Assembly (NCBI GenBank): GCA_965637545.1
Contig: OZ281498.1
Span: 9,052,001 to 9,116,000, forward strand
Length of the DNA: 64,000 nt
Direction of reading: 5' to 3'
Source of the DNA: Phallusia mammillata
Lineage: Eukaryota
Position 1 is the stretch's first letter. Every line of letters begins with the position of its first letter. Shown here one piece after another: positions 18,504 through 44,600 of the stretch. The position numbers and the translations under genes were made by a program. Below the pieces are notes generated by a model, which made no database searches, was not told the origin of the DNA, and was given only the letters and a program-made list of their open reading frames with translations.

Positions 18504-18804
18504 TAGGAGGGGAAGGAGGTGGACTTAAACGTCGATCGGTGCTCGCTTTGCGAGTTTGTGTGTTTGAGCTGAATGTCTACGCAATGTGTCGTATATTGCA
18601 GAATCGAGGGGAAGAAGGGAGACTGGAAAGTCGATCGGTGCTCGCTTTGCGAGTTTGCGTGTTTGATACATGACCTAATTGGACGATGTAATTGTGTTGA
18701 TACATGATGTCCTAAATTAAATTGTATATTATGTGTTTTGTTGTGCAGACTGCGTTAGCAAGACAGAGTAATTTTCAAATGTTGTTTATCGTACTACAGC
18801 TAAA

Positions 18805-19011
18805 ATGAACAGGGGTAACAGTAATGACACTGTGTTGGACGAATTTTACGAATCAAATGGATTCTCCCGCACTCTTCGTGTCTGGACAGTTGTAATGGAA
18901 AACGGAAGCCTTCAACGCCGAGAAGAACTTCGCGCGTTCGTGGATCATGAGATTTGCACTTACGCTGGACAACCTCTCTGCAGTCCTACAGGAGACGAGA
19001 TTTCGGAGTAA
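18805..19011 (+). CDS. Uncharacterised 68-aa acidic microprotein, paralog 1
   Basis: MNRGNSNDTVLDEFYESNGFSRTLRVWTVVMENGSLQRREELRAFVDHEICTYAGQPLCSPTGDEISE; AAAATG start context; colinear without indels with the copies at 31531 and 42258, with many third-position changes. Confidence 0.75.
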   Translation: MNRGNSNDTVLDEFYESNGFSRTLRVWTVVMENGSLQRREELRAFVDHEICTYAGQPLCSPTGDEISE

Positions 19012-21639
19012 ATGTGAAAAAATGTGGACTTGTGGTGCTGAGAAACAATGTTATTGGGAAGATTAACTTGTATAGTCAATTAGTTTTTAGCCATTCCATT
19101 CCACAAAGTTCATATTAGAAACAATGAATGAGTTTAAAACTTTTGTTTTTAGAAGTTCAACTTTTACAATTTACTCTTTTTGACTTGTTCCAAATATGTC
19201 GGTTAGTTTAATTTCTTTACTGTACCCGTCCTTGTTATTGATCTTAAAAACACGTTTTTCCAAACCCCTTTATTCTTCATTTATTTAGTTTCTTTTGTGT
19301 ATGTCTATTGACCCCGTCCCCGCTTCATGACTATGTTGTTGTGTTACAAACAACACACGAGGCACGCGCGCACTGTGCCCATTTACACACACGCATGCAC
19401 ACTTTTTTTCATTTTTTGACTAGTATGGAGTTGCATAATGTGATACATGATAATAAAAACTACGATGTCAAGTAGGAATGGACCGAATCAGCTAAATTTG
19501 GGTTTGGCACAAACCGAATATTGGGCTCGTTTGACATAAAACATAAGTTTTTCTACCAGGTTAACATTGGTGCTACACAACATAGGATAATTGTGTTTTA
19601 TCATCTTAGCTACTTTACTTAGCTAAACTTTAACTTACAACCAGATATTAACAAACACCAGGCACAAGGGGTATTAGCTTAAACATGCTGCTTTGAATTT
19701 GAATAAATTGTGCTTTCTGGCGATTGTTCTGGCGATTGTTTTTTTTTTGTGATTTCGAGGGCAAGTTGTGCATTTAATTTACCACAGGGGTGACTGAACA
19801 AGACTATGTGGAGCGACGGACAGTACCATTCTAATACAACGGTAACAAGCTTCTATAAACTTGTTTCGCTTTCACGCCTTCTATACCAACTGCGAAGTTT
19901 TTGTAACTTTTCATTTGGTAAATCTAGTGTAACTCTGTGTAAAATGTATACACTTCCCTTCTGCCGAACCCCTTTGTTCCCAATTCGAATGACAAAAGAA
20001 GGCAGTTGTTTGCGCATAATTGTAGTATAATCTTCTCAAATTTTCCTCAGACTAACTAGATGCCTGCATTTTGCTGTAAGAATTAAATTGGGTTTTGACT
20101 GTTACCTAAAGCTTTCGTGTTGCTGACTAAATCTAACTGCCCATCTCTGCTCAAGAGGCAGGAACTTTCATACAAAAAAAATTCTCATAGAGCGAGATTT
20201 CGATCGCTTTCTTACCGAAAACAGCTGCATGTTGTAACATGCTTATTTTTCAAGCATTAGTTGTGACGTCACCATGAAAAAGTTACTGAAGTTAAAAGTG
20301 TTTTCTCGCCAAATAGTCATGATATGTATCGCTGCGTGTAGAGTTTAATTCCTGTTCACGGGAGAGCGCTTTCACAAAAACGGGCACCACCAAACAAACA
20401 CCCCGAACTGGGCGCGACCAAACAACAACCCTCGCAGGTTACTTGTCACGTGGTCCAGTTGACAGAAAAAAAGAGCGAGGCGCACCCTTGTCTCTTCTTT
20501 CTCTCTGCTCTTTTCTTTGTTAGGATCCGCCAATGATCACTTGGAGGTGATTGAAAAAAAAACGAAATTTTCTTTTTCGCAAAAGCTTCAAAGGAAATTG
20601 ATAATGGCTGTGCACAGCAGGAAATAATACATACACTACGATTCGCACGAGAAGTTATGAGTGAGTTGAAGTTATGGCTTACTTCAAATCATGTTCATCT
20701 GTTTTCTTAAAATATTTACCTTTTGTTTTTGAGAACAGTTATTTAACTTGTGCGGTGAAAATTAGCAGCTGGAAAAACATTAGCAGTTTTAGAAAAGTAA
20801 AGTTTATCTCCCATCGACATTTACGTGGGGTTAGGTTTTCGCAATGTTTGTTGAACTTTTGACGAGCCGCACTTATTTAAAAATTAGGGCAGCTGTGCGT
20901 CTCACCGTAGGTTATTGTATAAAATGGATCGCTTTTTCATCAAAAATAGTTGCGTGTTATTACATGCTTATTTTTCACGCAGTGAATTTGAGCTAAAAGA
21001 TAAAGCGATTGTGTTGAACCTGAAAGTCCCTGGTTAAACTTAAGTGGCCTTTTAATCACAGTGACAAAAATGGCAGACTTACTGGATGAAATCGTGTGTT
21101 GTATTTTTTTCCTCCAAAATTTGTTTCAGAATCGAACGGTTGTGTTGTTATCTTGAAAATTTAAGCTCCGTTTATTTATTTGTTTATTATATTGCAGAAA
21201 ATACGAAATATAAAAACATATTAGAGATGTTTAAATTGATAAGTCGGAGACGTGTTTTTGACTAAATAATCAGAGCTGAGCTTCCGTATTTCTATTTCAC
21301 CAGATCCTCAATTGTTTTATATTAATTGATTTCTTCATGTTTTGACAATATCAGGTTAGAAAAATATTCCAGAAAAAAAACTTAGACTTTTTTGTATGCT
21401 AAGGTTTTGATCGCAAATATTTCGTATCCCAAAGTGATTAGAGCTGTTTATTGGAAACGGAAAAGTAGAAGCGGTACAGGCTAGCAGCAGCAATTATGGG
21501 TTGTCATCAACCGGGGATTTCCCATTTTATGCCAAAAGAGAAAATCAGCTGATTTCCTTTTCAACGATACCCGCGCGGAAAGAAGAGATTAAGGCGACCT
21601 TCTGAGATTCAACGCATCATGTCAAGACTCAATGGTGGT

Positions 21640-23660
21640 AGTGGCTGGTGTAGACAGAGTCGTCGATCGCTGCTCGCTTTAGCGCCTGGTATGTTTGACT
21701 TCTACGCATCGTGTCGAGGCGCAATGGTCGTGGTTTGGGTAGACTGGGTCGTCGATCACTGCTCGCTTTCGAACGTCGTGTCTTTGCCTCACTTCTTCGC
21801 ACAGCGTCGGGGCGAAATAGTCGTTGTTTGGGTAGACTGGGTGGTCGATCGCTCCTCGCTTTAGCGCCTGGTCTGTTTGACTTCTACGCATCGTGTCGAG
21901 ACGCAATGGTTGTGGCTGTGGTAGACTGAGTCGACGATCTCTGCTCGCCAAAAGTCTATTGGCCCATGTTTATCGTCTTTAAAAAGTGCTGAAATTGAAC
22001 ACATTAGGGCAATTGGGGTTGTGGAAAAGGTTTGCATTTCCACGTGATAATTTACCACAAAAACATGTTTTTGAAAATGCATTGTTTCTTTTTTGGGAAA
22101 ACAACGAAACAAAACAAACGAATTTGAACATTAACACCAGGAATCGAAATAAAGAAAGATCGTAAAATCACCAGATGTAATTTAATGCAAGTTTAGAATA
22201 TTACTTCTAGTGATTGTCCTGTAACTTTGGCATCCGTTCGTACTTCGCAGCAAGTCAAGGCAAAATGCCGTGATGTCGACCGTTACTCTAAGCGTGCCAC
22301 TGTGAGACAACAAAGGAAAGAAGGCAAGGAAAAAAAGGCAAAAGATTGCAAATATAACAATACTATATGACGAGTAATGACCAAAGAGGTGCTGGGTAAA
22401 TTCGAAGAGAAAGGAATAGAAAGGAAATGAGGTTTAGCGCAGGTCGTGGTTTGGGCAGATTGGGTCTACGATCGCTGCTCGCTTTAGCGCCTGGTATGTT
22501 TGACTTCTACGCATCGTGTCGAGGCGCAATGGTCGTGGTTTGGGCAGACTGGGTCTACGATCGCTGCTCGCTTTTTAAACGTTGTGTGTTTGCTTGACTT
22601 CTACGCATCGTGTCGAGGCACAATGGTCTTGGCTGAGGTAGACTGGGCCGTCGATCGCTGCTCGCTTTAGCGCCTGGTATATTTGACTTCTACGCATCGT
22701 GTCGAGGCGCAATGGTCGTGGTTTGGGCAGACTGGGTCTACGATCGCTGCTCGCTTTTTAAACGTTGTGTGTTTGCTTGACTTCTACGCATCGTGTCGAG
22801 GCACAATGGTCTTGGCTGAGGTAGTCTGGGCCGTCGATCGCTGCTCGCTTTAGCGCCTGGTATGTTTGACTTCTACGCATCGTGTCGAGGCGCAATGGTC
22901 GTGGTTTGGGTAGACTGAGTCGTCGATCGCTGCTCGCTTTCGAACGTCGTGTCTTTGCCTGACTTCTTCGCACAGCGTCGGGGCGAAATAGTCGTGGTTT
23001 GGGTAGACTGGGTGGTCGATCGCTGCTCGCTTTAGCGCCTGGTCTGTTTGACTTCTACGCATCGTGTCGAGGCGCAATGGTTGTGGCTGTGGTAGACTGA
23101 GTCGTCGATTGCTGCTCGCCAAAAGTCTATTGGCCCATGTTTATCGTCTTTAAAAAGTGCTGAAATTGAACACAATAGGGCAATTGGGGTTGTGGAAAAG
23201 GTTTGCATTTCCACGTGATAATTTACCACAAAAACATGTTTTTTGAAACTACATGAGAAATTGCGTTGTTTCTTATTTGACAAATCAACGAGAGAAAAAA
23301 ACGAATTTGAACATTAACATCTAAGAATCGGAATAAACAAATATCGTAAATCACCAGATGTAATTCAATATAGGTTTTGAAAATTACTTCCAAGTGACTG
23401 TCCGATGACTTTGCATCCTTACGTACTTCGTAGCAAATCAAGGCAAAATGCCGTAATGTCAACCGTTACTCTAAGCGTGCCACTGTGAGACAACGAAGGA
23501 AAAAAAGCAAGGAAAAGAAAAAGGCAAAAGATTGTGAATATAACAATGCGATATGGAGAGTATTGACCAGAGAGGTGTTGGGTAAAATCGAAGAGAAAGG
23601 AAAGGAAAAGAAAAGGAAGGAAAGGAAAGGAAAGGAAAGGAGGTTTAGCGCAGGTAACGT
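21640..23660 (+). repeat. Tandem segmental duplication (period 1171 bp) of satellite monomers plus an AT-rich spacer
   Basis: 21679->22850 and 21861->23032 are both offset by 1171; spacer 21950-22440 is homologous to 23121-23650. Confidence 0.9.
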
Positions 23661-23715
23661 TCATGAACAAAGATAGTTTCGGAGGAGAATATTTGGCGGC
23701 GCGCAAGAGGAACGT

Positions 23716-26700
23716 CGATCGCTGCTCGCTTTAGCGCCTGGTATGTTTGACTTCTACGCATCGTGTCGAGGCACAATGGTCTTGGCTGGGGTAGACTGAG
23801 TCGTCGATCGCTGCTCGTTTTAGCGCCTGGTATGTTTGACTTCTACGCATCGTGTCGAGGCACAATGGTCTTGGCTAGGGTAGACTGAGTCGTCGGTCGC
23901 TGCTCGTTGTAGCGCCTGGTATGTTTGACTTCTACGCGTCGTGTCGAGGGGCATTAGTCGTGGCTGGGGTAGACTGGGCCGTCGATCGCTGCTCGCTTTC
24001 GAACCTTGTGTGTTTGCTTGACTTCTACGCATCATATCGCGGCGCAATAGTCGTGGCTGGGGTAGACTGGGCCGTCGATCGCTGCTCGCTTTCGAACCTT
24101 GTGTGTTTGCTTGACTTCTACGCATCATATCGCGGCGCAATAGTCGTGGCTGGGGTAGACTGGGCCGTCGATCGCTGCTCGCTTTAGCGCCTGGTATGTT
24201 TGACTTCTACGCATCGTGTCGAGGCGCAATGGTCGTGGTTTGGGCAGATTGGGTCTACGATCGCTGCTCGCTTTAGCGCCTGGTATGTTTGACTTCTACG
24301 CATCGTGTCGAGGCGCAATGGTCGTGGTTTGGGCAGACTGGACGGCGATCGCTGCTCGCTTTCGAACCTTGTGTGTTTGCTTGACTTCTACGCATCATAT
24401 CGCGGCGCAATGGTCGTGGCTGGGGTAGACTGGGTGGTCGATCGCTGCTCGCTTTCGAACCTTGTGTGTTTGCTTGACTTCTACGCATCATATCGCGGCG
24501 CAATAGTCGTGGCTGGGGTAGACTGGGCCGTCGATCGCTGCTCGCTTTCGAACCTTGTGTGTTTGCTTGACTTCGACGCATCATATCGCGGCGCAATAGT
24601 CGTGGCTGGGGTAGACTGGGCCGTCGATCGCTGCTCGCTTTCGAACCTTGTGTGTTTGCTTGACTTCTACGCATCATATCGCGGCGCAATAGTCGTGGCT
24701 GGGGTAGACTGGGCCGTCGATCGCTGCTCGCTTTCGAACCTTGTGTGTTTGCTTGACTTCTACGCATCATATCGCGGCGCAATAGTCGTGGATGGGGTAG
24801 ACTGTGCCGTCGATCGCTGCTCGCTTTCGAACCTTGTGTGTTTGCTTGACTTCTACGCATCATATCGCGGCGCAATAGTCGTGGCTGGGGTAGACTGGGC
24901 CGTCGATCGCTGCTCGCTTTCGAACCTTGTGTGTTTGCTTGACTTCTACGCATCATATCGCGGCGCAATAGTCGTGGCTGGGGTAGACTGGGCCGTCGAT
25001 CGCTGCTCGCTTTCGAACCTTGTGTGTTTGCTTGACTTCTACGCATCATATCGCGGCGCAATAGTCGTGGCTGGGGTAGACTGGGCCGTCGATCGCTTCT
25101 CGCTTTCGAACCTTGTGTGTTTGCTTGACTTCTACGCATCATATCGCGGCGCAATAGTCGTGGCTGGGGTAGACTGGGCCGTCGATCGCTGCTCGCTTTA
25201 GCGCCTGGTATGTTTGACTTCTACGCATCGTGTCGAGGCGCAATGGTCGTGGTTTGGGCAGACTGGGCCGTCGATCGCTGCTCGCTTTCGAACCTTGTGT
25301 GTTTGCTTGACTTCTACGCATCATATCGCGGCGCAATGGTCGTGGCTGGGGTAGACTGGGCCGTCGATCGCTGCTCGCTTTCGAACCTTGTGTGTTTGCT
25401 TGACTTCTACGCATCATATCGCGGCGCAATAGTCGTGGCTGGGGTAGACTGGGCCGTCGATCGCTGCTCGCTTTCGAACCTTGTGTGTTTGCTTGACTTC
25501 TACGCATCATATCGCGGCGCAATAGTCGTGGCTGGGGTAGACTGGGCCGTCGATCGCTGCTCGCTTTCGAACCTTGTGTGTTTGCTTGACTTCTACGCAT
25601 CATATCGCGGCGCAATAGTCGTGGCTGGGGTAGACTGGGCCGTCGATCGCTGCTCGCTTTAGCGCCTGGTATGTTTGACTTCTACGCATCGTGTCGAGGC
25701 GCAATAGTCGTGGCTGGGGTAGACTGGGCCGTCGATCGCTGCTCGCTTTCGAACCTTGTGTGTTTGCTTGACTTCTACGCATCATATCGCGGCGCAATAG
25801 TCGTGGCTGGGGTAGACTGGGCCGTCGATCGCTGCTCGCTTTCGAACCTTGTGTGTTTGCTTGACTTCTACGCATCATATCGCGGCGCAATAGTCGTGGC
25901 TGGGGTAGACTGGGCCGTCGATCGCTTCTCGCTTTCGAACCTTGTGTGTTTGCTTGACTTCTACGCATCATATCGCGGCGCAATAGTCGTGGCTGGGGTA
26001 GACTGGGCCGTCGATCGCTGCTCGCTTTAGCGCCTGGTATGTTTGACTTCTACGCATCGTGTCGAGGCGCAATGGTCGTGGTTTGGGCAGACTGGGCCGT
26101 CGATCGCTGCTCGCTTTCGAACCTTGTGTGTTTGCTTGACTTCTACGCATCATATCGCGGCGCAATGGTCGTGGCTGGGGTAGACTGGGTGGTCGATCGC
26201 TGCTCGCTTTCGAACCTTGTGTGTTTGCTTGACTTCTACGCATCATATCGCGGCGCAATAGTCGTGGCTGGGGTAGACTGGGCCGTCGATCGCTGCTCGC
26301 TTTCGAACCTTGTGTGTTTGCTTGACTTCTACGCATCATATCGCGGCGCAATAGTCGTGGCTGGGGTAGACTGGGCCGTCGATCGCTGCTCGCTTTCGAA
26401 CCTTGTGTGTTTGCTTGACTTCTACGCATCATATCGCGGCGCAATAGTCGTGGCTGGGGTAGACTGGGCCGTCGATCGCTGCTCGCTTTAGCGCCTGGTA
26501 TGTTTGACTTCTACGCATCGTGTCGAGGCGCAATGGTCGTGGTTTGGGCAGATTGGGTCTACGATCGCTGCTCGCTTTAGCGCCTGGTATGTTTGACTTC
26601 TACGCATCGTGTCGAGGCGCAATGGTCGTGGTTTGGGCAGACTGGACGGCGATCGCTGCTCGCTTTCGAACCTTGTGTGTTTGCTTGACTTCTACGCATC

Positions 26701-29700
26701 ATATCGCGGCGCAATGGTCGTGGCTGGGGTAGACTGGGTGGTCGATCGCTGCTCGCTTTCGAACCTTGTGTGTTTGCTTGACTTCTACGCATCATATCGC
26801 GGCGCAATAGTCGTGGCTGGGGTAGACTGGGCCGTCGATCGCTGCTCGCTTTCGAACCTTGTGTGTTTGCTTGACTTCGACGCATCATATCGCGGCGCAA
26901 TAGTCGTGGCTGGGGTAGACTGGGCCGTCGATCGCTGCTCGCTTTCGAACCTTGTGTGTTTGCTTGACTTCTACGCATCATATCGCGGCGCAATAGTCGT
27001 GGCTGGGGTAGACTGGGCCGTCGATCGCTGCTCGCTTTCGAACCTTGTGTGTTTGCTTGACTTCTACGCATCATATCGCGGCGCAATAGTCGTGGCTGGG
27101 GTAGACTGGGCCGTCGATCGCTGCTCGCTTTAGCGCCTGGTATGTTTGACTTCTACGCATCGTGTCGAGGCGCAATGGTCGTGGTTTGGGCAGATTGGGT
27201 CTACGATCGCTGCTCGCTTTAGCGCCTGGTATGTTTGACTTCTACGCATCGTGTCGAGGCGCAATGGTCGTGGTTTGGGCAGACTGGACGGCGATCGCTG
27301 CTCGCTTTCGAACCTTGTGTGTTTGCTTGACTTCTACGCATCATATCGCGGCGCAATGGTCGTGGCTGGGGTAGACTGGGTGGTCGATCGCTGCTCGCTT
27401 TCGAACCTTGTGTGTTTGCTTGACTTCTACGCATCATATCGCGGCGCAATAGTCGTGGCTGGGGTAGACTGGGCCGTCGATCGCTGCTCGCTTTCGAACC
27501 TTGTGTGTTTGCTTGACTTCGACGCATCATATCGCGGCGCAATAGTCGTGGCTGGGGTAGACTGGGCCGTCGATCGCTGCTCGCTTTCGAACCTTGTGTG
27601 TTTGCTTGACTTCTACGCATCATATCGCGGCGCAATAGTCGTGGCTGGGGTAGACTGGGCCGTCGATCGCTGCTCGCTTTCGAACCTTGTGTGTTTGCTT
27701 GACTTCTACGCATCATATCGCGGCGCAATAGTCGTGGATGGGGTAGACTGTGCCGTCGATCGCTGCTCGCTTTCGAACCTTGTGTGTTTGCTTGACTTCT
27801 ACGCATCATATCGCGGCGCAATAGTCGTGGCTGGGGTAGACTGGGCCGTCGATCGCTGCTCGCTTTCGAACCTTGTGTGTTTGCTTGACTTCTACGCATC
27901 ATATCGCGGCGCAATAGTCGTGGCTGGGGTAGACTGGGCCGTCGATCGCTGCTCGCTTTCGAACCTTGTGTGTTTGCTTGACTTCTACGCATCATATCGC
28001 GGCGCAATAGTCGTGGCTGGGGTAGACTGGGCCGTCGATCGCTTCTCGCTTTCGAACCTTGTGTGTTTGCTTGACTTCTACGCATCATATCGCGGCGCAA
28101 TAGTCGTGGCTGGGGTAGACTGGGCCGTCGATCGCTGCTCGCTTTAGCGCCTGGTATGTTTGACTTCTACGCATCGTGTCGAGGCGCAATGGTCGTGGTT
28201 TGGGCAGACTGGGCCGTCGATCGCTGCTCGCTTTCGAACCTTGTGTGTTTGCTTGACTTCTACGCATCATATCGCGGCGCAATGGTCGTGGCTGGGGTAG
28301 ACTGGGCCGTCGATCGCTGCTCGCTTTCGAACCTTGTGTGTTTGCTTGACTTCTACGCATCATATCGCGGCGCAATAGTCGTGGCTGGGGTAGACTGGGC
28401 CGTCGATCGCTGCTCGCTTTCGAACCTTGTGTGTTTGCTTGACTTCTACGCATCATATCGCGGCGCAATAGTCGTGGCTGGGGTAGACTGGGCCGTCGAT
28501 CGCTGCTCGCTTTCGAACCTTGTGTGTTTGCTTGACTTCTACGCATCATATCGCGGCGCAATAGTCGTGGCTGGGGTAGACTGGGCCGTCGATCGCTGCT
28601 CGCTTTAGCGCCTGGTATGTTTGACTTCTACGCATCGTGTCGAGGCGCAATAGTCGTGGCTGGGGTAGACTGGGCCGTCGATCGCTGCTCGCTTTCGAAC
28701 CTTGTGTGTTTGCTTGACTTCTACGCATCATATCGCGGCGCAATAGTCGTGGCTGGGGTAGACTGGGCCGTCGATCGCTGCTCGCTTTCGAACCTTGTGT
28801 GTTTGCTTGACTTCTACGCATCATATCGCGGCGCAATAGTCGTGGCTGGGGTAGACTGGGCCGTCGATCGCTTCTCGCTTTCGAACCTTGTGTGTTTGCT
28901 TGACTTCTACGCATCATATCGCGGCGCAATAGTCGTGGCTGGGGTAGACTGGGCCGTCGATCGCTGCTCGCTTTAGCGCCTGGTATGTTTGACTTCTACG
29001 CATCGTGTCGAGGCGCAATGGTCGTGGTTTGGGCAGACTGGGCCGTCGATCGCTGCTCGCTTTCGAACCTTGTGTGTTTGCTTGACTTCTACGCATCATA
29101 TCGCGGCGCAATGGTCGTGGCTGGGGTAGACTGGGCCGTCGATCGCTGCTCGCTTTCGAACCTTGTGTGTATGTTTGACTTCTACGCGTCGTGTCGAGGG
29201 GCATTAGTCGTGGCTGGGGTAGACTGGGCCGTCGATCGCTGCTCGCTTTCGAACCTTGTGTGTTTGCTTGACTTCTACGCATCATATCGCGGCGCAATAG
29301 TCGTGGCTGGGGTAGACTGGGCCGTCGATCGCTGCTCGCTTTCGAACCTTGTGTGTTTGCTTGACTTCTACGCATCATATCGCGGCGCAATAGTCGTGGC
29401 TGGGGTAGACTGGGCCGTCGATCGCTGCTCGCTTTAGCGCCTGGTATGTTTGACTTCTACGCATCGTGTCGAGGCGCAATGGTCGTGGTTTGGGCAGATT
29501 GGGTCTACGATCGCTGCTCGCTTTAGCGCCTGGTATGTTTGACTTCTACGCATCGTGTCGAGGCGCAATGGTCGTGGTTTGGGCAGACTGGACGGCGATC
29601 GCTGCTCGCTTTCGAACCTTGTGTGTTTGCTTGACTTCTACGCATCATATCGCGGCGCAATGGTCGTGGCTGGGGTAGACTGGGCCGTCGATCGCTGCTC

Positions 29701-31200
29701 GCTTTCGAACCTTGTGTGTTTGCTTGACTTCTACGCATCATATCGCGGCGCAATAGTCGTGGCTGGGGTAGACTGGGCCGTCGATCGCTGCTCGCTTTCG
29801 AACCTTGTGTGTTTGCTTGACTTCGACGCATCATATCGCGGCGCAATAGTCGTGGCTGGGGTAGACTGGGCCGTCGATCGCTGCTCGCTTTCGAACCTTG
29901 TGTGTTTGCTTGACTTCTACGCATCATATCGCGGCGCAATAGTCGTGGCTGGGGTAGACTGGGCCGTCGATCGCTGCTCGCTTTCGAACCTTGTGTGTTT
30001 GCTTGACTTCTACGCATCATATCGCGGCGCAATAGTCGTGGATGGGGTAGACTGTGCCGTCGATCGCTGCTCGCTTTCGAACCTTGTGTGTTTGCTTGAC
30101 TTCTACGCATCATATCGCGGCGCAATAGTCGTGGCTGGGGTAGACTGGGCCGTCGATCGCTGCTCGCTTTCGAACCTTGTGTGTTTGCTTGACTTCTACG
30201 CATCATATCGCGGCGCAATAGTCGTGGCTGGGGTAGACTGGGCCGTCGATCGCTGCTCGCTTTCGAACCTTGTGTGTTTGCTTGACTTCTACGCATCATA
30301 TCGCGGCGCAATAGTCGTGGCTGGGGTAGACTGGGCCGTCGATCGCTTCTCGCTTTCGAACCTTGTGTGTTTGCTTGACTTCTACGCATCATATCGCGGC
30401 GCAATAGTCGTGGCTGGGGTAGACTGGGCCGTCGATCGCTGCTCGCTTTAGCGCCTGGTATGTTTGACTTCTACGCATCGTGTCGAGGCGCAATGGTCGT
30501 GGTTTGGGCAGACTGGGCCGTCGATCGCTGCTCGCTTTCGAACCTTGTGTGTTTGCTTGACTTCTACGCATCATATCGCGGCGCAATGGTCGTGGCTGGG
30601 GTAGACTGGGCCGTCGATCGCTGCTCGCTTTCGAACCTTGTGTGTTTGCTTGACTTCTACGCATCATATCGCGGCGCAATAGTCGTGGCTGGGGTAGACT
30701 GGGCCGTCGATCGCTGCTCGCTTTCGAACCTTGTGTGTTTGCTTGACTTCTACGCATCATATCGCGGCGCAATAGTCGTGGCTGGGGTAGACTGGGCCGT
30801 CGATCGCTGCTCGCTTTCGAACCTTGTGTGTTTGCTTGACTTCTACGCATCATATCGCGGCGCAATGGTCGTGGCTGGGGTAGACTGGGCCGTCGATCGC
30901 TGCTCGCTTTCGAACCTTGTGTGTTTGCTTGACTTCTAATCATCATATCGCGGCGCAATAGTCGTGGCTGGGGTAGACTGGGCCGTCGATCGCTGCTCGC
31001 TTTCGAACCTTGTGTGTTTGCTTGACTTCTTTGCATATCGTCGAGAAGCAGTAGTCGTGGCTGTTGTAGACTGGGCGGTCGCTTTCGAATCTTGCGTGTT
31101 TGCACTGACTTTTGCGCATCATGTCGAGGCGCAGTAGACTGGGTCGTCGATCGCTGCTCGCTTTTAAACGTGGTGTGTTTGCACTAAATTCTAGGCATCA
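23716..31200 (+). repeat. CpG-rich satellite array (93-bp A and 88/89-bp B monomers) with a 2304-bp higher-order repeat
   Basis: A monomer TCGAACCTTGTGTGTTTGCTTGACTTCTACGCATCATATCGCGGCGCAATAGTCGTGGCTGGGGTAGACTGGGCCGTCGATCGCTGCTCGCTT; B monomer starts TAGCGCCTGGTATG; HOR starts at 24185, 26489 (partial, 642 bp), 27131 and 29435. Confidence 0.97.
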
Positions 31201-31530
31201 TGTCGAGGCAAACGAAGTATGGATTAGATGTTGTTTCGCTGAACATTCGTATGTTGGACAGGACGTTGTTTTGCATTGTAGAAAAGCTGAAACTCATTTT
31301 AAGTCGAAAATGAAAACGGCTCGACAAATACTACTGCGTTTCAGTGACGGCGTTGATGCATCGTTGACATGCCTTTGGTTAATAAGTTATAGTGTGTTAT
31401 CTTAAACGTTACTTCTGAATTGATGATTGGTGTTTTTCTTGTATAGGTTGCACCAAATGCTAAAGCAAGACAGCGAATTAGTTAAATATTTCAAATTTTC
31501 GCTTCAGTCTTGAGTTTTTCCGCACTTAAA

Positions 31531-31737
31531 ATGGATGGGGATGACGGTAATGACATTCTGTTGGAAGAATCGTACGAATCTGATGGATTTTTCCGCACTA
31601 TTCGGGTGTGGACAGTTGTAATAGAAAATGGAACCCTTCAACGCCATGAAGAACTTCGCGCATTCGTTGACCAAGATACATTTACATATGCTGGTCAACC
31701 ACTCTGCTGTCCTACTGGAGATGAGATTGCCGAATAG
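31531..31737 (+). CDS. Uncharacterised 68-aa acidic microprotein, paralog 2
   Basis: MDGDDGNDILLEESYESDGFFRTIRVWTVVIENGTLQRHEELRAFVDQDTFTYAGQPLCCPTGDEIAE; AAAATG start at 31531 (the TTG at 31510 in the ORF track is probably UTR); 57/68 identical to paralog 3. Confidence 0.8.
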   Translation: MDGDDGNDILLEESYESDGFFRTIRVWTVVIENGTLQRHEELRAFVDQDTFTYAGQPLCCPTGDEIAE

Positions 31738-34529
31738 ACTGAAAAAATTGGGATCCGTTCTGGTGCTGAGAAACAATCGCAGAGAAAGATTTAATTGTAA
31801 TCATTTTTTGCAAACGCCATTCCATTAAGTTCACCTTCAAAACAATGACTGGGGTTGAAACTGTTGTTTTCAAAAGGTCAACAATTCGAAATTTATTTAA
31901 TTTTTAACCTTTATCCCAGATCTGCCGACCGTGTTCGATTTTTTTCAAAACCTGTCTGTGCTTCATTGATTTTTTGTGTATTTTTTTCCATGTTCCAAAG
32001 GGACTGCAGCTGCTTGAAGCGATTTTTCACCAATGATGAAGTTCCAATTGTATGTTTGTATGGTCGCTGAAAGCTAATTAATGTACGTGGTAGCGCATTG
32101 TGTAAGTTTATTTATGCGAATGTCAAATTTTTACAGACATTAATTGAATCTCTATTATCATCATTTTTATTTCTTCACCAATCATCTTTAGATTGGATGA
32201 AACAATGTTATATATCCATTCTTAAATTGCTATCTATGTCAAGCATTTTTCCCTCCTCATCACTCTTGGAGTTGTGAAATTTACCAAGTGCTATAACGTA
32301 GTTGCCTGGTTTTCTCAACTTTTTTCAAAATTTCCAGCTTGAATTTGTATTTGATGCTTGCGTAACATGGATTGTGCGTTGGTTTTAGGAATGTATATTG
32401 ATAGTAAAGCTGTTCTACAAACATTCCAAGTAATCTAATATTGTATAAAATGAGTTTTATATTTTATGAAATATTTGGTATGAAGTTTCATAGATGAATT
32501 AACTACAAGGCATTTAATAAGAAGACAGTTTTATGGATTTTTAGCCTGATTATTATTTTTTAAATATTTTGCTGTTTGTCATGTACAAAATGTTGCTTTG
32601 TTCTTTTAGTGCTTCATAATACAACATTGCTGTTTTAAAACGCGTGATAAGCATTTTAAAACAAGCACTAAGAGTCATGAGAGATTCACAGCACGTGTCG
32701 TTGCATTTTTGAACTTCTATCAATTTTATGTTACAATATACACGTTTTTAAATGGTTACAAACACAGATATTGGTGCTTTGATTATTATTTTACAATTTA
32801 AAGCCTTAAGCGACAAACTTTTCGTTTTACAACCGATACGTTTGCATTATTTTGCCATGTCCAACGCAAAAACAAACATTTTTGGCACATAGAAATGTAG
32901 CATAACTAATCGAATGAAAAAACTCTTGAATTTGTGATCATGTGATTTTTTTGCTTCCACTTGCTAAGTGGAAGCTACCAACGTGAGAACTCAATTCACA
33001 AAAGATTGCGAAGTACCCATAGGTGGCGCAAAGAGCATTACGAATAAAAACAAAATTGTGTGAAAATGCTGACGGTAAGTATGCGGGTTGGGGTGATGTT
33101 ATACAAAAAAAGTAACATTAAAACTTACATAAAACTTGGTTCCTAACGTTTAATTTATTTTCTGAAGCTGAAACAATTGTACGCTTTTTACGCCCTCTAT
33201 CGGAATTTATCAAAATTTTCTGATTTTAGATCCAATTTTAATAGTACTGAGTAAAATTGGTTGACAAAACTCGTGTTACGTTCTTTGTCAATACGCGTCC
33301 TCAGACAAGACAAACTTCCTGGTTTCACACCTGGCCTGGCCTTGCCCGCTGGTTGGCTTGCTCGTAATTTAAAGAAATGTTCAGCAAAAAGTTATTGATC
33401 GACGCCAAAGTTTTTTAACTAAGTAATACAGACATTACTGTCGTCTACTAGGATGCTGGTCACGTGAGCGCTGTGGTCAATCAGAGACGACAATTTAGTT
33501 CCAGGTGAGGTGGTGACGTAAAGTAAAGTCCATCGCACATACAACATAAATAATAAACTACCAATTAGCATTTTTAAACGATCGATATTTTATTTGCTGA
33601 GTACCCATCAGTAAATTTACTCCCATTGCGTGATAATTGTCAATACCATCGTTGTGGTGTTCATAGCGCAGTGCACTGCAAGTAAATGTCTTTCACTACA
33701 GTGTGTGTATTTCAACACAAGTTGTTGAAGCATCAGCATAAAGCCGATAAACATAAAACGAAAAACCTTTTATAGCACAAAATTCTTGGAACGGAATTCA
33801 TACACACACAGAAGGACACTAAGTTATCGGCAGGCGCATAACTGGATACAGAAAAAAATATCACTTAAAAATCAATTAACTTTGAACAACCAGAATAACA
33901 AAAGCAGGTGCTTAGAAATAATATCGCTGTCAAGAGTCAATATGGTAATACATTATTCCAAAATTTACTGTACATTTTATGTGCTTTAATAATTAAATTT
34001 TAAAATCTTCTAAAACAAGAATCATAGCCGTAAAATACAAAACATCTTGTTTCAGGTACCAGTTTTTTTTAGCGGGGACCACGCAGAATAAAGCTTTTAC
34101 ATCCGACCAAATTGTGTTTGTGGTACTCCATTTTTCTCCTAACATCCAGAGGCGCAGTTGAAAAGTTGGCAAACACCCACCTGTCTCGGGCGGAGCGGAG
34201 TTCCAGTAAGCGATCGGGACCGACCGAGTTCGGGCCGGGTTCGGGCTCCAATTTCAAGCCTGTTTACAACTCTGATCCGACAAAATTGTGTCACTCCATC
34301 AAGATTTTGGTGTAACACAAGCCAACTCAACCCAAAACGAGTTATATATAGCGAACTGCCAGTGTGACGGAACGGGCTTGCTCTGTTTAAACAAAAGATC
34401 CTCACAGGCTGGAGGAGCGAAGATTTAGTTTCTTTTTGAGCGTTACTTTTTTCTTTGCAGTCGGTCTGTAGTTCAGATTGCGCTCGAGTCTTGTCCAAAT
34501 GGTTCGAGTTCTGCTGACAAGAAGCAGCA

Positions 34530-35400
34530 TTAGTTTGCTAAAACGACGGCTAGGCTATTCTACACAAAGGCTAGTTTTCGTATTTTATTGAAGTAAGTAT
34601 TAAAATATTTATACTTTTCTGTATGGTTGGGTTATAGTTGCAATTTTTTTTATCCCAAAATGATTGAAGCTGTTCACGGGAATGTATAAATAGAAAAGAG
34701 AAGTCAGCTGTGCAACAGCAAAATGTAAAATGTTCATTGCAGTATGATCGTGTGGGGCAGGGCCAGTGTTTAGTTATGTTATTTTAAGCTCTTTTAGGAC
34801 AATTGCACGGCTTTAGCATCACGCCGACATCGACTCGATTTAAACTACATTCGGGGCAATATTGGCGTCGAGTTCCCGTGAGCACATAGCTTGTTTCATC
34901 ATATGTTACTAAGCAAGTAGCGTCGCTGAGTACAAAGGTAGCGACGGTTGTGAGGTTTGATATGTGGCATCTTTCTAAGTCAGCATTGAGGCTTCTGCGA
35001 TACATAAAACATTTTCGCGGCACCTAACACTATCAACAGGCCGATTCAGTTAAGCCTAAATAAACGCTTGGATTTAGATCTGAATTAACACTCCGCCAAA
35101 TTTGTCCTCTAATTTTACGAGAGTAAATCAAACATTATTGGTCATTATCCTTTTGTTCTTCTCGTTGGCCGTTGGTTGGTGTCAACACACGTAAAAATGT
35201 ATTGAAGCGACAATGAACAACCACCGATACTTTCACTAATGAGCTGTGCAGCGCTTTTTGGAAATCAGTAGAAGCCTACCTAACGTATCCTAAAATGCAT
35301 TTAAGTTGTTAACCAACACAATTTTTGCCCCAACTTGCGATTTGCTGGCGGTCGCGCTTTAGGCTAGATCCACACACACGCTCGCGCGCCAGCGCACAGT
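34530..35400. repeat. Dispersed duplicated block, homologous to 38130-39080 and more weakly to ~6550-6970
   Basis: Shared blocks include AAAATATTTATACTTTTCTGTATGG, GCAATATTGGCGTCGA.TTCCCG, TGGCATCTTTCTAAGTCAGC and TGTGCAGCGCTTTTT(T)GGAAATCAGT. Confidence 0.8.
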
Positions 35401-38129: not shown

Positions 38130-39080
38130 TTTATGGTGCTGACTCAGCAGTTTCGTATTTTTTTGAAATAAGTAATAAAATATTTATACTTTTCTGTATG
38201 GCTGAGTTATAGTCGCATTTTTTTGGTCTCAAAATGAATGGAGCTGTTTTGGGAATTGCATAAGTAAAAAAAGGAAGTGAATTCGTTACCAAAAAAATAA
38301 AAGGGCATTCCAATACGATTGTGCAGGGCAGGGCCGGTGTTTAGTTTTTTGTTTACAGATTGGCCGAGATGTGACCTCTAGTACAAAAAAACTATTATAT
38401 TTAAATTTGTTCCGTGCATTGTTAATGACTGTGCCAACAATGTTATTTTAGGAGAAAAAAACGCAGAGCATCAGACAGATTTAGACTTGATTCGGACCAT
38501 TGCATCCGCAATATTGGCGTCGAATTCCCGCCTTGAGCCAGGGGGAAAGATATAAAGGTTGTGGTGAATTTAAGTTTTTAATATCTGGCATCTTTCTAAG
38601 TCAGCGGTGAGGCTTCTGCGACACATAAAATATTTTCGCGGACCAAAATCTAAACAGGTCGGACTAAGCCTATATAAACGCGCTTGGATTTAAATCCGAA
38701 TTGACACTCGGCTTAATTTATCTCCAAATTTTATGAGAGTTAATAAAAGAGATCGGTCATTACCCTTTTGCTCTTTTCGTCGGCCTTTGGTTGGTGTCCA
38801 CACACGTTAATGTATTAAAGCGACGATGGCAGCCACCAACAGTTTCATTAAAAACCTGTGCAGCGCTTTTTTGGAAATCAGTGGAAGGTTGCCGGACGTG
38901 TCCTCAAATGCTTTCAAGTTGTTAGCCATGATAGTTTTTGACCCACAAGCGATTTCCAACGCGAGACGCCTGTACGCAAGAGCACTCCGGAGAAAAAAGT
39001 GACAATGTGTGTGTTGGAGCGGCCTGAGAAAATGGGGCTTTCCCGGTGGAAATTTGCAAATGTGTTGTCAAGGCTCGTCT
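38130..39080. repeat. Dispersed duplicated block (partner of 34530-35400)
   Basis: Colinear similarity with indels; the 3' part GCACTCCGGAGA..TGTGTGT..GGAAATT also matches 6875-6950. Confidence 0.8.
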
Positions 39081-39442
39081 AATATCTTATCTTTTAATGA
39101 AACAACATAGGTTTTGAAATTTAAATCGGAAGATTTCGCCGTTTTACAAGATAATTAGTAAGTACGCGTTTTTAATTGAATACAAAAAACGAGAAAATAC
39201 GGTTTTGCCTTGCATAACTGGTTAATGTAGGCGTAAAAAATAGTGGAAAATTGGGGTACTATTGGAGAACGAGTTTGCGTCGAGAAAATTGTAACGAATT
39301 ATACGATTACTTCTGCCAGTGACAGAATTACTGCCTCGGTGTCTCTCTTGAATTTATGCGCGACTGTTTGCGCAATTTTGAACGCACGTGTGTGTACAAA
39401 GGTTTGCACGTGTGACCGCCGACGTTCGACCGACTTTCTGAT

Positions 39443-39830
39443 GGTAGAGCTACTAACACCATAACGAGAATCTACCCCTAAATTTAATTGGTTATATCTC
39501 CGAAAATGCTCACGGTTAGGGCTATTAGGGTCGGGGTAAGGCATTAGCACTTAAAATTCAAAAAAAAAACTAACCCAAAAACTTAGTTACTAATGTAAAA
39601 ATTTTATGTAAATATTTCCCAACCCAACCCATTTATAGCGGCTAAATAAATAAAAATTCAGCTCTTTCCGCCCCCTTACAAAGCGAAGTTCTGATTCTCG
39701 TTATGGTGTTAGTATTTTTTTTTATTGCGCATAAACATCACGACAAAAAGACGATTATAACGATCAAACACATATAGCCATTAGCGCAGGTGGGCATTCC
39801 ACTTCACGTTATGGTGTTAGTAGCTCTACC
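39443..39830. mobile_element. MULE/Mutator-like MITE, 388 bp
   Basis: 24-bp TIRs GGTAGAGCTACTAACACCATAACG; 9-bp flanks CTTTCTGAT / CTTTCCGAT (8/9 TSD); TTAGGG-like and CTAACCC-like internal motifs. Confidence 0.8.
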
Positions 39831-40619
39831 CTTTCCGATCAGTTCGACCAGGGCGACACCGTAGGGAGATTGAGAAGCACTATGACCTCTTTTTTATTTG
39901 ACTTTTTCGCGTCCTTCGGTCGCGAACCCTTCGGTCGCCGTTGGAGAGAATATGATGTTTTTCTATTTTTGCATTGTGTTTCTTCGTACCGCTCGTTTAT
40001 TAGCGCACAATCAACAAAAAATGCCGTTAGAATAGATATGTTGGAATAACGCGGGGAAACATTTGTGTTAATTTACTGTAAAGGTTGTAGGTCGCGATTT
40101 GTCGACTGCGGGGCGCATTTTGCACAGGGTTAACAGCTTTGCTGCTAAACAAAATCGTGGAATAACACATTTCTGATGGTTAACTGTAAAGATCAAAAAT
40201 GTAAGCTGAAATGTAGCGATGGTGTTGGGCAGTAACTGGCCATTTAATCCACAGGGAGAGAAAACTGTGAGAGATTGTATGTTGTATTAGTTTGTGCTGC
40301 AGAATTTGTTTTAGAATCGATCGACTTTGTTGTTATCTTCTAAACTTTGGCTGTGTTTAATTATTTGTTGTATCCCGGAATAGTCACAGTTTAACAAATC
40401 AAATGTCAGAGAGACCTGTTTGTGAAGAAATATTTGGAGTTTTTTCTATTCCAACAAATCATTTTCTGTTCAAATCCAGTTGTTTGTTAACTAAATCTTT
40501 TGACAATTTTAGGTTGGAAAAGTAGTTTATTGCTAAATACAACCCAGTTCACCGTGTTTCCGTCAGGATTAACAGTTTCAACCCAACATGCGATAACACA
40601 TTAGTTAGAAATTCCGCGG

Positions 40620-40880
40620 CTATAACAAAGTGGTGTTTCGAAATAGCCTGACTTACACGCGTCGAGGCGCAATTGTTGTGACTGGATAGGTTGGGTTGCC
40701 GATTGCTGCTCGCTTAGCGCTTTGTGTGTTTGTATTGACTGAAATGCCGCGGCTCTAACGAAGTGGTGTTTCGAAATGACCTGACTTCCACGCGTCGAGG
40801 CGCAATTGCTGCGACTGGATAGGTTGGGTCGCCGATTGCTGCTCGCTTAGCGCTTTGTGTGTTTGTACTGACTGACTTCT
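40620..40880 (+). repeat. Two tandem degenerate satellite-family monomers (~115-bp period)
   Basis: TGACTT.CACGCGTCGAGGCGCAATTG.TG.GACTGGATAGGTTGGGT.GCCGATTGCTGCTCGCTTAGCGCTTTGTGTGTTTGTA occurs twice; homologous to the array monomer. Confidence 0.8.
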
Positions 40881-40943
40881 ACATATTGTGCGGACGTAAC
40901 TGCTGATGGGCATGTAAATGCGACCAACTTATGAACAGGGAGT

Positions 40944-41360
40944 CGAACCGCTTGTCATATGGGTTCAGGTTCGGTTCGGGTTCACTTGGTTTTGTTTTTA
41001 AGGGTTCGGGTTCAGGTCCGTTTTTAAAAATGTATATTTTCGGGTTCGGGTTTTGTTCCGGTTTGGGCAAGTTATCCGGTTCGAACCGGTTTGCGGTTTT
41101 TAAACCGGTTTAAGTTTTTATTTGTTTCAATTCAATTCTACCCATCATCTACCTGGCCTTAGCAAACGCCAAAATAATTTTGCCCGTGTGCTGTTATCTT
41201 TGACACGCCCTATATGTGTTATCTCGCATATTCTTCAGTGCGCTGTTTTGAACAAAAAATCATAAAATATAAAACAGACTGCATTTTTTTACTGGTTCGG
41301 TTCCGGTTCGGGTCCAACGCCAAACAAAATATAGGGTTCAACTCCGGTTTGGGTTTTTAG
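40944..41360. mobile_element. Remnant of a hAT-like element with (CGGGTT/CCGGTT)n subterminal repeats
   Basis: Dense GGTTCGG/AACCGG motifs in two clusters; no intact TIR or TSD found. Confidence 0.5.
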
Positions 41361-42257
41361 AAAATCGTAATTTCTAAAATCGTAAAAATCGTAAACAGGC
41401 GAGTCACTCGATCAGCAGTAGAGAAAAAGGCAAAGATAAAGGACAAGGCGGTAAAGGCGCTTGTAGATTTGTATACAACTATACTATAGTATAGTAGCAT
41501 TCCTCAATCAATTAAGAAAGGCCAACGAAGCTAACGTTTTTGGCTGAGGCAGTGTAGTGGAATGCAATAAAAAGCAAGCAAAGCAAATATACAGGTGAAA
41601 GTTGTCCCTTTTTCAAGTGAGCTTATTTTTGTGCAAGGGTGCAGTGCTACGAAATAAAAGAAATGTATTTTTGTGTTGTGATGCGTAAGAAATCAGTTTA
41701 GTTTATTACTTTTTAACTCAGCGTATAGTGTCCCCACAGTAAATATGTCAAAAAGAATGCACATTGCATCTTGTAAATGTTTCGTACATCGCTCGAAAAG
41801 GCCTTTGTTTGTTTATGTTTTGATATGGTTTTATGTTTTGATACGGTTATTGAATGTGAATAAAGGTAAAATGAAAGGTCTGTTGTACACGTGCGTTAGC
41901 TGTTAAGAAACCTCCGATATAGTGAAAAACGGAACCTGACCATGGCAACTGTGCACTGACACACATGATTAGATAAGTCAACAAACCGGCTCCAAAGATA
42001 GACATCCAACAAGATAGTTGCAGAAGAAATGTTTACCACTTTACTTGATTGTCACATTACAAATCGCTTTAATACTTGTTTTAATTTTGGTTTCAGCCTT
42101 GTTCATGCTACGTGCATCATGAATGAAATATTTTGCCCCAACATTTTAATGACCAATGTTTCTGTTGTACAGTCTGCGCTAAATGCGAAAGCAAGACAGC
42201 GAAATAGTTGAATATTTTAAATTTTTGCTACAGTCTTGAGTTTTGCCACACTTCATA

Positions 42258-42464
42258 ATGAACGAGGATGACGGTAATGACATTGTGCTGGAAGAATCGT
42301 ACGAAGCTGATGGATTTTTCCGCACTCTTCGTGTTTGGACAATAATGACCGAAAATGGATGCCTGCAACGCCGTGAAGAACTCCGCGCATTCGTGGATCA
42401 AGACACATTTACATATGCTGGGCAACCACTCTGCTGCCCGACAGGCGACGAGATTGACGAATAG
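42258..42464 (+). CDS. Uncharacterised 68-aa acidic microprotein, paralog 3
   Basis: MNEDDGNDIVLEESYEADGFFRTLRVWTIMTENGCLQRREELRAFVDQDTFTYAGQPLCCPTGDEIDE; the in-frame TGA at 42237 upstream makes ATG 42258 the likely start. Confidence 0.8.
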   Translation: MNEDDGNDIVLEESYEADGFFRTLRVWTIMTENGCLQRREELRAFVDQDTFTYAGQPLCCPTGDEIDE

Positions 42465-43007
42465 ACGAGAAAAAAAGTGAGAACTTACTTCTTTCTGGTG
42501 CTGAGAAGCAATGTATAGGGGGAAAAATAACTGTAGTCATTTATTGTTTTGTATTTCCGCAAAGTTCATATTCAAAACTATGCCTAAGATTAAAACTACT
42601 GTCTTTAAATGTAAACTTTCAAAGTTTACTTTAAACTTTCAAAGTTTACTTTAAATCTTGTCCTAAATCTGACTGTTAAGTTCAACTTCTTTCGGATCCT
42701 TGTCTCTGACTTTTGTGTTAAAAACATATTTTTCCAAAACTTGTTTGTTCTTCATTAGTTTTTTTGTGTTGTATTTTAGTTATTTCTCCCAAAGGGACTA
42801 TAGTTGTTTGAAGTGATGTTCTACGTTCGGTAAAGTTCCATCTATTTGTTTTTACGAACGGCCAAAGCCAATCAATGCATTTGGTAAAACATTGTGTAAG
42901 TTTATTTATGATGAATGTAAAACTTCTACGGACACAATCTCAATTCCTTTTCAAACCAAAAGTCATGTTCAAACCAAAATCGTTCATTCTTGAATTACTG
43001 TCTGTGC

Positions 43008-44504: not shown

Positions 44505-44600
44505 TGCAGCTCGTTGTGACGTCACACACGCTCGACAACAACACAACACGTGAAGGCGGATCACGCGCGCGCGGCGTGATTGAGGCGTGCGCGCAGTGGA
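44505..44600 (+). promoter_or_regulatory. CpG-rich putative promoter of the SLC25A33/36-like gene, with a CRE palindrome
   Basis: TGTGACGTCACA (44515-44526) and GCGCGCGC/GCGTGCGCGCA motifs ~650 bp upstream of the ATG; candidate splice donor AG|GTAACT at 44827/44828. Confidence 0.45.

What the first reader, a model, noticed from the sequence alone, without database searches (positions are those of the whole stretch)
18805..42464. Three-copy family of unrecognised 68-aa acidic microproteins under apparent purifying selection
Seen: three + strand ORFs (18805, 31531, 42258; spacing 12.7 and 10.7 kb) of exactly 207 nt each, with no indels, while their flanks carry many indels. By hand count, paralogs 2 and 3 differ at 14 synonymous codons and 11 amino acids, which suggests dN/dS well below 1. 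Invariant core: G-F-x-R-T-[IL]-R-V-W-T...E-N-G-x-L-Q-R-x-E-E-L-R-A-F-V-D...T-Y-A-G-Q-P-L-C-x-P-T-G-D-E-I-x-E. An in-frame stop upstream of paralog 3 and a 1-nt indel in the leader argue that the ATG is the true start, so this is a whole small protein and not a terminal exon. There is no signal peptide or TM segment, and I recognise no domain. Inference: a lineage-specific, tandemly expanded intracellular microprotein family that length-filtered annotation would miss.
Basis: partly seen in the sequence, partly recalled or inferred. Interest (0 to 1): 0.88.

Follow-up and report, generated by a model that had tools for sequence, protein, structure and literature searches.

The report
Orphan 68-residue acidic protein gene trio
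Three head-to-tail copies of a very small gene in a sea-squirt genome have kept the same 68-residue acidic protein intact despite long divergence, and one copy is transcribed and spliced, so this is a real but unannotated small-protein family with no detectable relatives and no known function.

Summary
There are three + strand ORFs of 207 nt at 18805, 31531 and 42258. None has an indel, while the flanks carry many. Copies 2 and 3 differ at 11 residues and 14 synonymous codons.

A codon-model fit on the three copies gives omega 0.18-0.20, and omega = 1 is rejected (p about 1e-8). Only the sense frame shows this signal.

These are the only three copies in the 240-Mb genome. Contigs from two RNA-like public runs, from two studies, cover the ORF of copy 3 with no mismatch. 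One of them stops matching the genome exactly behind an AG at 42233/42234. The ORF therefore sits on a spliced exon. In copy 3 that exon has stops in all three frames at or before the first codons of the ORF, so the ATG starts a free-standing protein.

No relative turned up in Pfam, PDB sequences, 1.84 billion protein representatives, a size-matched search of 5.8 billion protein clusters, or metagenome contigs. The structure model is weak: three beta strands and a disordered but strongly conserved tail.

Verdict: a genuine, lineage-restricted, tandemly duplicated small-protein gene family of unknown function. The scan has already noted several similar orphan arrays in this genome, so interest is moderate, not high.

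The parts
18805..19011 (+). Paralog 1: 68-codon ORF plus TAA stop. It is the most diverged copy (69% aa identity to copy 2).
31531..31737 (+). Paralog 2: 68-codon ORF plus TAG stop.
42258..42464 (+). Paralog 3: 68-codon ORF plus TAG stop. Contigs of two RNA-like runs cover it with 0 mismatches (42256-42436 in X1, 42234-42338 in X2).
42234..42257 (+). 24-nt leader of copy 3, from the RNA-supported 3' splice site (AG at 42232-42233) to the ATG. It holds the in-frame TGA at 42237-42239, and the other two frames also reach stops.
   Evidence: X2 record 13 matches only from 42234 on; its other 85 nt are loose
42173..42233 (+). Conserved block just upstream in copy 3. It follows a second candidate acceptor (pyrimidine tract plus CAG) that all three copies share. 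Equivalents are 31447-31507 in copy 2 and about 18749-18799 in copy 1. Copies 2 and 3 are 84% identical here with one indel. In copies 2 and 3 it holds an 18-codon upstream ORF ending at the TGA, which copy 1 lacks.
   Evidence: uORF read directly from the sequence
42465..43958 (+). Downstream homology of copy 3 to copy 2 (31738-32648), interrupted by a high-copy repeat at about 42937-43527. All three copies align for about 300 nt after the stop (copy 1: 19012-19300). This is probably 3' UTR. The 3' end and the poly(A) signal are not resolved.
18530..18665 (+). Two relic monomers of the locus-private satellite, 140-275 nt upstream of paralog 1.
21608..31209 (+). Satellite arrays of 89- and 93-bp monomers (about 80 copies of the 93-bp unit at 23713-31081). 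They end 322 nt upstream of paralog 2. The satellite was found nowhere else in the genome.
40608..40875 (+). Relic of the same satellite family (133 bp x 2), 1.4 kb upstream of paralog 3. A high-copy repeat is inserted between the relic and the gene (40936-41372).
40233..40560 (+). Non-coding block homologous to 21041-21380 (about 72-74% identity, many indels). In copies 2 and 3 it lies just upstream of the satellite. It is a candidate promoter or first-exon region. No counterpart was found upstream of copy 1.

Best explanation
These are three tandem paralogs of a real protein-coding small gene. Each makes a free-standing, soluble, strongly acidic 68-residue protein. The ORF sits on an exon that is spliced to one or more upstream, probably non-coding, 5' exons. 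The intron or promoter region of each copy carries monomers of a satellite found only at this locus. Shown: the ORFs, their frame-specific purifying selection, their restriction to this locus, coverage of copy 3 by contigs of RNA-like runs with a break at a splice acceptor, and the lack of detectable relatives. Inferred: the protein stays in the cytosol or nucleus and works as a small binding or regulatory subunit. On this reading a short beta-sheet core (about residues 19-47, 22 of 29 invariant) presents an acidic N-terminal arm and a conserved, probably unstructured tail (residues 48-68, 15 of 21 invariant, one invariant Cys) that docks on a larger partner. The partner and the process are unknown.
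For: Coding and constraint. Omega is 0.18-0.20, with omega = 1 rejected at p about 1e-8. Differences pile up at third codon positions. Among the six frames, only the sense frame combines low omega with an open frame; the antisense frame that is open in copies 2 and 3 has omega about 1 and a stop in copy 1. There are no indels in the ORF against 4-6 gap openings per 207 flank columns per pair. At the flank rate, about 8 events would be expected on the tree, giving a chance of none of about 3e-4 (my estimate). dS of 0.56-0.84 shows the duplications are old, yet all three ORFs are intact.
Transcription and splicing. An X1 contig of 181 nt and an X2 contig of 190 nt, from two studies, match copy 3 with 0 mismatches. 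The surrounding unique DNA has zero depth in those runs but about 115-130 in the DNA run X3. The X2 contig stops matching exactly behind AG at 42233.
Free-standing ORF. From 42234 all three frames reach stops within 40 nt. The ATG at 42258 is the first ATG on the exon and has A at -3 in all three copies.
Locus-restricted orphan. Only 3 genomic matches. No Pfam hit at E <= 10. No true hit among 1.84 billion representatives. None in the size-matched search, PDB sequences or metagenome contigs.
Shape. AlphaFold2 gives three strands (10-16, 19-32, 35-47) and a low-confidence tail.
Against: There is no evidence of translation (no Ribo-seq or proteomics). RNA support is thin: two short, low-depth contigs (depth about 3.7), for copy 3 only, from runs whose RNA status is the tool's guess. 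The upstream exon was not located, and neither was the 3' end. In copies 1 and 2 the frame is open back to the nearest candidate acceptor. The structure model is weak (mean pLDDT 57) and rests on only 3 sequences, so the proposed architecture is tentative. The binding-subunit mechanism is inference from composition and conservation pattern only. 'Orphan' could not be tested against other tunicate genomes.
Confidence: 0.72

Rival explanations
1. The ORF is the C-terminal coding exon of a larger multi-exon protein, at least in copies 1 and 2. Copy 3 would be a truncated derivative that starts at the internal Met.
For: The ORF exon is spliced to upstream sequence. In copies 1 and 2 the frame is open from the nearest candidate acceptor to the ATG, and in the same phase, 5 and 23 nt.
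Against: In copy 3 all three frames are closed behind the acceptor, yet the copy 2 to copy 3 pair shows the strongest constraint (omega 0.15). If the distal acceptor shared by all three copies is used, copies 1 and 2 are closed too, by in-frame stops at 18769 and 31483. The upstream translations do not align between copies, and copies 2 and 3 differ there by a frame-breaking 1-nt indel. A six-frame comparison of the regions upstream of the three copies found no shared coding exon, only DNA-level homology in several frames. No longer relative exists among 1.84 billion protein representatives.
Confidence: 0.12
2. The ORF belongs to a mobile or satellite-associated element: a gene or gene fragment carried by a transposon and copied with it.
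For: Each copy is preceded by monomers of the same tandem repeat. Repeats and transposon fragments fill the locus (depth table).
Against: Only three copies exist, all in direct order at one locus, and the satellite also occurs only here. No transposase, integrase or other element domain matched. No terminal repeats bound the units. The divergence (dS 0.56-0.84) with strong purifying selection fits old local gene duplicates.
Confidence: 0.05
3. The ORFs are non-functional. On this reading their conservation reflects constraint at the RNA or DNA level (regulatory element, structured RNA, antisense gene), or chance.
For: No translation data exist. Long antisense open frames overlap copies 2 and 3 (98 and 102 aa).
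Against: The excess of third-position changes and omega of about 0.2 are specific to the sense frame. The antisense frame has omega about 1 and is closed in copy 1. Omega = 1 is rejected at p about 1e-8. Rfam finds nothing in the window.
Confidence: 0.05

Closest known systems
Other orphan tandem arrays of small soluble protein genes noted by this scan in the same genome (e.g. s1-358924: ten head-to-tail copies of a gene for a 67-84-residue soluble protein)
   Same: Similar size, soluble, tandem head-to-tail copies, no known family, and at least one copy transcribed.
   Different: No sequence relationship. A profile of the three copies finds only these three places in the whole genome, even at E <= 10. 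This family has fewer copies, all of them intact, and carries a private satellite.
WD40 repeat blade (Pfam PF00400), via the weak hit to the WD40 protein P0002
   Same: Residues 17-47 loosely resemble the strand-turn-strand of a WD40 blade, with a '...IR[VI]W...' stretch followed by '...G-T-[LF]-Q...EL'. The model is also a beta hairpin.
   Different: No Pfam WD40 match even at E <= 10. The E-value of the hit is inflated because one weak motif match is summed over five repeats. The spacing between the preceding 'DG' and the 'IRVW' is far too short for a blade. A single 30-residue piece cannot form a propeller.
Described animal smORF-encoded microproteins (tarsal-less/pri, sarcolamban/myoregulin; named from my own knowledge, not tested here)
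   Same: An ORF under 100 codons on a spliced mRNA that standard annotation misses, recognised by its coding-type conservation.
   Different: Those are 11-50 residues long, and are either repeated peptides or single membrane helices. This one is a 68-residue acidic soluble protein with a predicted beta core, and there is no sequence similarity.

Membership tests
smORF / microprotein gene (operational class) | ORF under 100 codons with its own start codon, not part of a larger coding sequence | tested here: met
   68 codons. For copy 3 the RNA-supported exon start at 42234 is followed by stops in all three frames. For copies 1 and 2 this was not shown with RNA.
smORF / microprotein gene (operational class) | Transcribed | tested here: met
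   Copy 3 only. Contigs of runs X1 and X2 (two studies) match with 0 mismatches while the flanking unique DNA has no coverage. The RNA status of those runs is the tool's guess.
smORF / microprotein gene (operational class) | Coding-type sequence conservation (dN/dS well below 1, frame kept) | tested here: met
   Omega 0.18-0.20, p about 1e-8. The signal is specific to the sense frame. No indels in the ORF.
smORF / microprotein gene (operational class) | Translated (ribosome footprints or peptides) | not testable with these tools
   No Ribo-seq or proteomics data were within reach.
WD40 repeat (PF00400) | Significant match to the family profile | tested here: not met
   No Pfam family at E <= 10 for any of the three proteins.
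Transposable-element ORF | Dispersed multi-copy distribution and element-type protein domains | tested here: not met
   Three copies at one locus only. No domain match.
Secreted peptide or antimicrobial peptide precursor | N-terminal hydrophobic signal peptide | tested here: not met
   The N-terminal 18 residues are acidic, and GRAVY is -0.48 to -0.65. This rests on inspection only; no signal-peptide predictor was available.

The most novel reading that the evidence does not exclude
This is a young protein family, either born de novo or evolving too fast to trace, that arose at this locus in the ascidian lineage together with its private satellite. Its conserved, unstructured C-terminal tail, with the invariant Cys, would be a new short docking motif through which the 68-residue protein regulates a conserved cellular machine. 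The satellite in its intron or promoter region would tune expression of the copies.
Probability: 0.15. Interest if true: 0.6.

Novelty: new member of a known kind. Interest (0 to 1): 0.38.

Why it matters
The result adds a well-supported, unannotated protein-coding gene family to a chordate genome. It also shows that comparing paralogs alone can certify a 68-codon gene. If the conserved tail is a docking motif, the protein could give a handle on an ascidian-specific regulatory step. The matching private satellite upstream of every copy makes the locus a tidy case of a gene and a satellite evolving together. On present evidence, though, it is one more lineage-restricted small gene of unknown function. 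Such genes are common in fast-evolving tunicate genomes, and the scan has noted several in this one.

Tried and rejected
Homology searches:
- Pfam at E <= 10 gave nothing.
- The ESM Atlas gave only chance-level bacterial hypothetical proteins (139 of 256 shared features).
- The profile search of 1.84 billion representatives gave three hits. All are repeat proteins: a translated DNA repeat, a WD40 protein and an FG-GAP/VCBS protein. One short motif match is summed over the repeats, so I judge them spurious.
- The search among proteins of 37-119 aa gave nothing.
- PDB sequences gave E = 1.9 at best.
- The metagenome contig scan gave nothing.

Structure and binding:
- Foldseek on the low-confidence model found nothing at E <= 0.001. 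I did not interpret the weaker rows.
- The homodimer prediction returned no verdict (score 0.04, below the mark), which is not evidence either way.

Gene structure:
- A six-frame comparison of the upstream regions found no shared coding exon.
- A sensitive search for a counterpart of the 21041/40233 block upstream of copy 1 found nothing.
- Rfam and tRNA scans of the window were empty.
- Poly(A) signals are not at conserved positions, so the 3' end is left open.

Literature and tools:
- Two literature searches found nothing on this family.

I also considered and dropped, as chance resemblances in short motifs, a KEAP1-type 'TGE' docking motif, an LC3-interaction motif and P-type ATPase motifs. 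None is conserved in the required form in all three copies.

Note on method: the 93-nt satellite consensus printed was pasted into the script instead of being given by reference.
Full report
**What is there**

The window is AT-rich animal DNA (GC about 0.37). Earlier notes of this scan call the organism a sea squirt, and one names Phallusia mammillata. I did not check the name.

Each is 68 codons plus a stop. Of 68 alignment columns, 46 are invariant. Copies 2 and 3 are 84% identical, and copy 1 is 69% identical to copy 2. A profile of the three finds only these three places in the 240-Mb assembly even at E <= 10. A DNA search with the copy 3 unit likewise finds only three.

**Is it coding?**

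Differences by codon position are 8/5/17, 9/8/25 and 11/9/26 for the three pairs. NG86 dN/dS is 0.15-0.22, with dS 0.56-0.84.
- I fitted a Goldman-Yang-type codon model to the three-copy star tree. Omega is 0.18 (F3x4) or 0.20 (F1x4). Fixing omega at 1 costs 2dlnL = 32.6 or 30.0, so p is about 1e-8.
- As a control I repeated the pairwise estimate in all six frames. Four frames have omega about 0.7-1.9. The fifth is the antisense frame whose third positions coincide with those of the sense frame; it shows 0.33-0.37, as expected, and carries 1-4 stops.
- The long antisense frame that happens to be open in copies 2 and 3 (98 and 102 aa) has omega about 1 and a stop in copy 1.
- The ORF has no gap opening in any pair. 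The first 207 aligned columns after the stop have 4-6 per pair, with identity falling from 77-86% to 66-70%. At the flank rate about eight indel events would be expected on the tree, so the chance of none is roughly 3e-4 (my estimate).

The ORFs are old duplicates kept intact by selection on the protein.

**Is it transcribed, and is it a whole protein?**

One search for sequencing runs and one read-laying run were allowed. I used both on copy 3, laying 38800-44700.

- The DNA-like run X3 covers the whole stretch at depth about 115-130, and one of its contigs spans 41336-43081 without a difference. The assembly is therefore sound here.
- The RNA-like runs X1 and X2, from different studies, have no coverage on the unique DNA around the gene. 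Apart from fragments of high-copy repeats, they cover only the ORF.
- X1 has a 181-nt contig at 42256-42436. X2 has a 190-nt contig of which 105 nt lie on 42234-42338. Both match with zero mismatches. The paralogs differ by 15-23% at the nucleotide level, so these contigs come from copy 3 itself.
- The other 85 nt of the X2 contig do not lie on the genome upstream. The break falls exactly behind the AG of 'gctacag' at 42233. That is what a 3' splice site looks like.

The ORF exon is therefore joined to at least 85 nt of upstream exon. That is too long to be a trans-spliced leader alone (own knowledge: the ascidian leader is 16 nt).

From 42234 the three frames read TCT-TGA, then a TAA at 42254-42256, then a TGA within 40 nt. 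No upstream coding frame can run into the ORF in copy 3. The ATG at 42258 is the first ATG on the exon, and A stands at -3 in all three copies.

The caveat concerns copies 1 and 2. Their frame stays open back to the nearest candidate acceptor (5 and 23 nt, same phase), so a fusion there is not formally excluded. Four observations argue against it:
- The upstream translations do not align between copies.
- Copies 2 and 3 differ in the leader by a frame-breaking 1-nt indel.
- If the distal acceptor shared by all three copies were used, in-frame stops at 18769 and 31483 would close the frame.
- A six-frame comparison of the three upstream regions found no shared coding exon.

**Anatomy of the duplicated unit**

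All three copies align from a shared pyrimidine-rich acceptor-like site about 55-85 nt before the ATG to about 300 nt after the stop. Copies 2 and 3 align for more than 1 kb downstream.

Each copy is preceded by monomers of one satellite family:
- two relic monomers at 18530-18665 before copy 1;
- the 89- and 93-bp arrays at 21608-31209 before copy 2;
- a 133-bp dimer at 40608-40875 before copy 3.

The satellite was found nowhere else in the genome. Another note of the scan (s1-405493) makes the same point, and I confirmed it independently. Upstream of the satellite, copies 2 and 3 share a non-coding block (21041-21380 and 40233-40560) that could be the promoter or first exon. Copy 1 has no detectable counterpart. 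The 3' end of the transcript is unresolved, because poly(A) signals are not at conserved positions.

**What is the protein?**

It is 7.7-7.9 kDa, with pI 4.05-4.56 and 12-17 acidic against 4-6 basic residues. It is hydrophilic and shows no hydrophobic N-terminus or membrane-length segment. Conservation is uneven: 7 of 18 residues invariant in the acidic N-terminal arm, 22 of 29 in the core (19-47) and 15 of 21 in the tail (48-68), including one invariant Cys.

AlphaFold2 on the three-row alignment gives a weak model (mean pLDDT 57). It has three antiparallel strands at 10-16, 19-32 and 35-47, and a tail with pLDDT about 40.

Every homology search was negative:
- Pfam;
- PDB sequences;
- Foldseek;
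- ESM Atlas;
- the size-matched protein search;
- metagenome contigs.

The exhaustive profile search of 1.84 billion representatives gave only three repeat proteins, whose scores come from one short motif summed over repeats. One of them is a WD40 protein whose blades loosely resemble residues 17-47. The WD40 profile itself does not match, so I do not file the family there.

**Most likely mechanism**

A small soluble protein with a conserved beta core, an acidic arm and a conserved but apparently unstructured tail is best read as a binding or regulatory subunit that docks on a larger partner. This is inference from composition and conservation only. I put it at perhaps one in three among functional possibilities. 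A homodimer prediction gave no verdict.

**Rivals**

- Terminal exon of a larger protein in copies 1 and 2: about 0.12.
- Cargo of a mobile or satellite element: about 0.05. Only three local copies exist and there are no element features.
- Non-coding conservation or chance: about 0.05. The frame-specific selection signal argues against it.

**Novelty and score**

This is a protein family without detectable relatives. It belongs to a familiar kind, the lineage-restricted small gene in a local tandem array. The scan has already recorded several unrelated arrays of that kind in this genome. I score it 0.38.

**Limits**

- No other tunicate genome could be searched.
- RNA evidence covers copy 3 only.

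Noticed in passing
window 21608-31209: Satellite arrays of 89- and 93-bp monomers, with about 80 copies of the 93-bp unit. Every reading frame is interrupted by stops at regular intervals, so it is not a coding repeat. A genome-wide DNA search finds it only at this locus. It is the subject of other notes of the scan.
   Followed up: partly
window 31455-31511 and 42181-42239: An 18-codon upstream ORF is shared by copies 2 and 3. It starts in the conserved leader block and ends at the TGA just behind the RNA-supported acceptor. The two versions differ by 4 non-synonymous and 2 synonymous changes, and the start region is deleted in copy 1, so it is probably not a conserved peptide. Splicing at 42234 would remove its ATG.
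   Followed up: partly
window 31507-31800 and 42231-42536, - strand: Antisense open frames of 98 and 102 aa overlap copies 2 and 3. Omega is about 1 and copy 1 has a stop there. They are a by-product of the sense codon usage, not a gene.
   Followed up: yes
window 45865-50138, + strand: Exons of a mitochondrial carrier (SLC25) gene. Four ORF pieces match Pfam Mito_carr above its cut-off. It is the next gene downstream of copy 3, on the same strand, about 3.4 kb away.
   Followed up: partly
window 54635-54874 and 57465-57686, + strand: Two ORF pieces show weak EGF-type matches, below the Pfam cut-offs. They are probably exons of an EGF-repeat protein gene.
   Followed up: no
window 39391-39784, 40936-41557, 42937-43527: Very high-copy repeats. 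Word depth in DNA run X3 reaches about 2e5 against about 120 for unique DNA, and the RNA-like runs also hold diverged copies. They are probably transposon fragments inserted into the copy 3 unit.
   Followed up: no
window 34576-35343 vs 38151-38955: A direct duplication of about 0.8 kb (77-79% identity) between copies 2 and 3. It has no clear coding signal.
   Followed up: no
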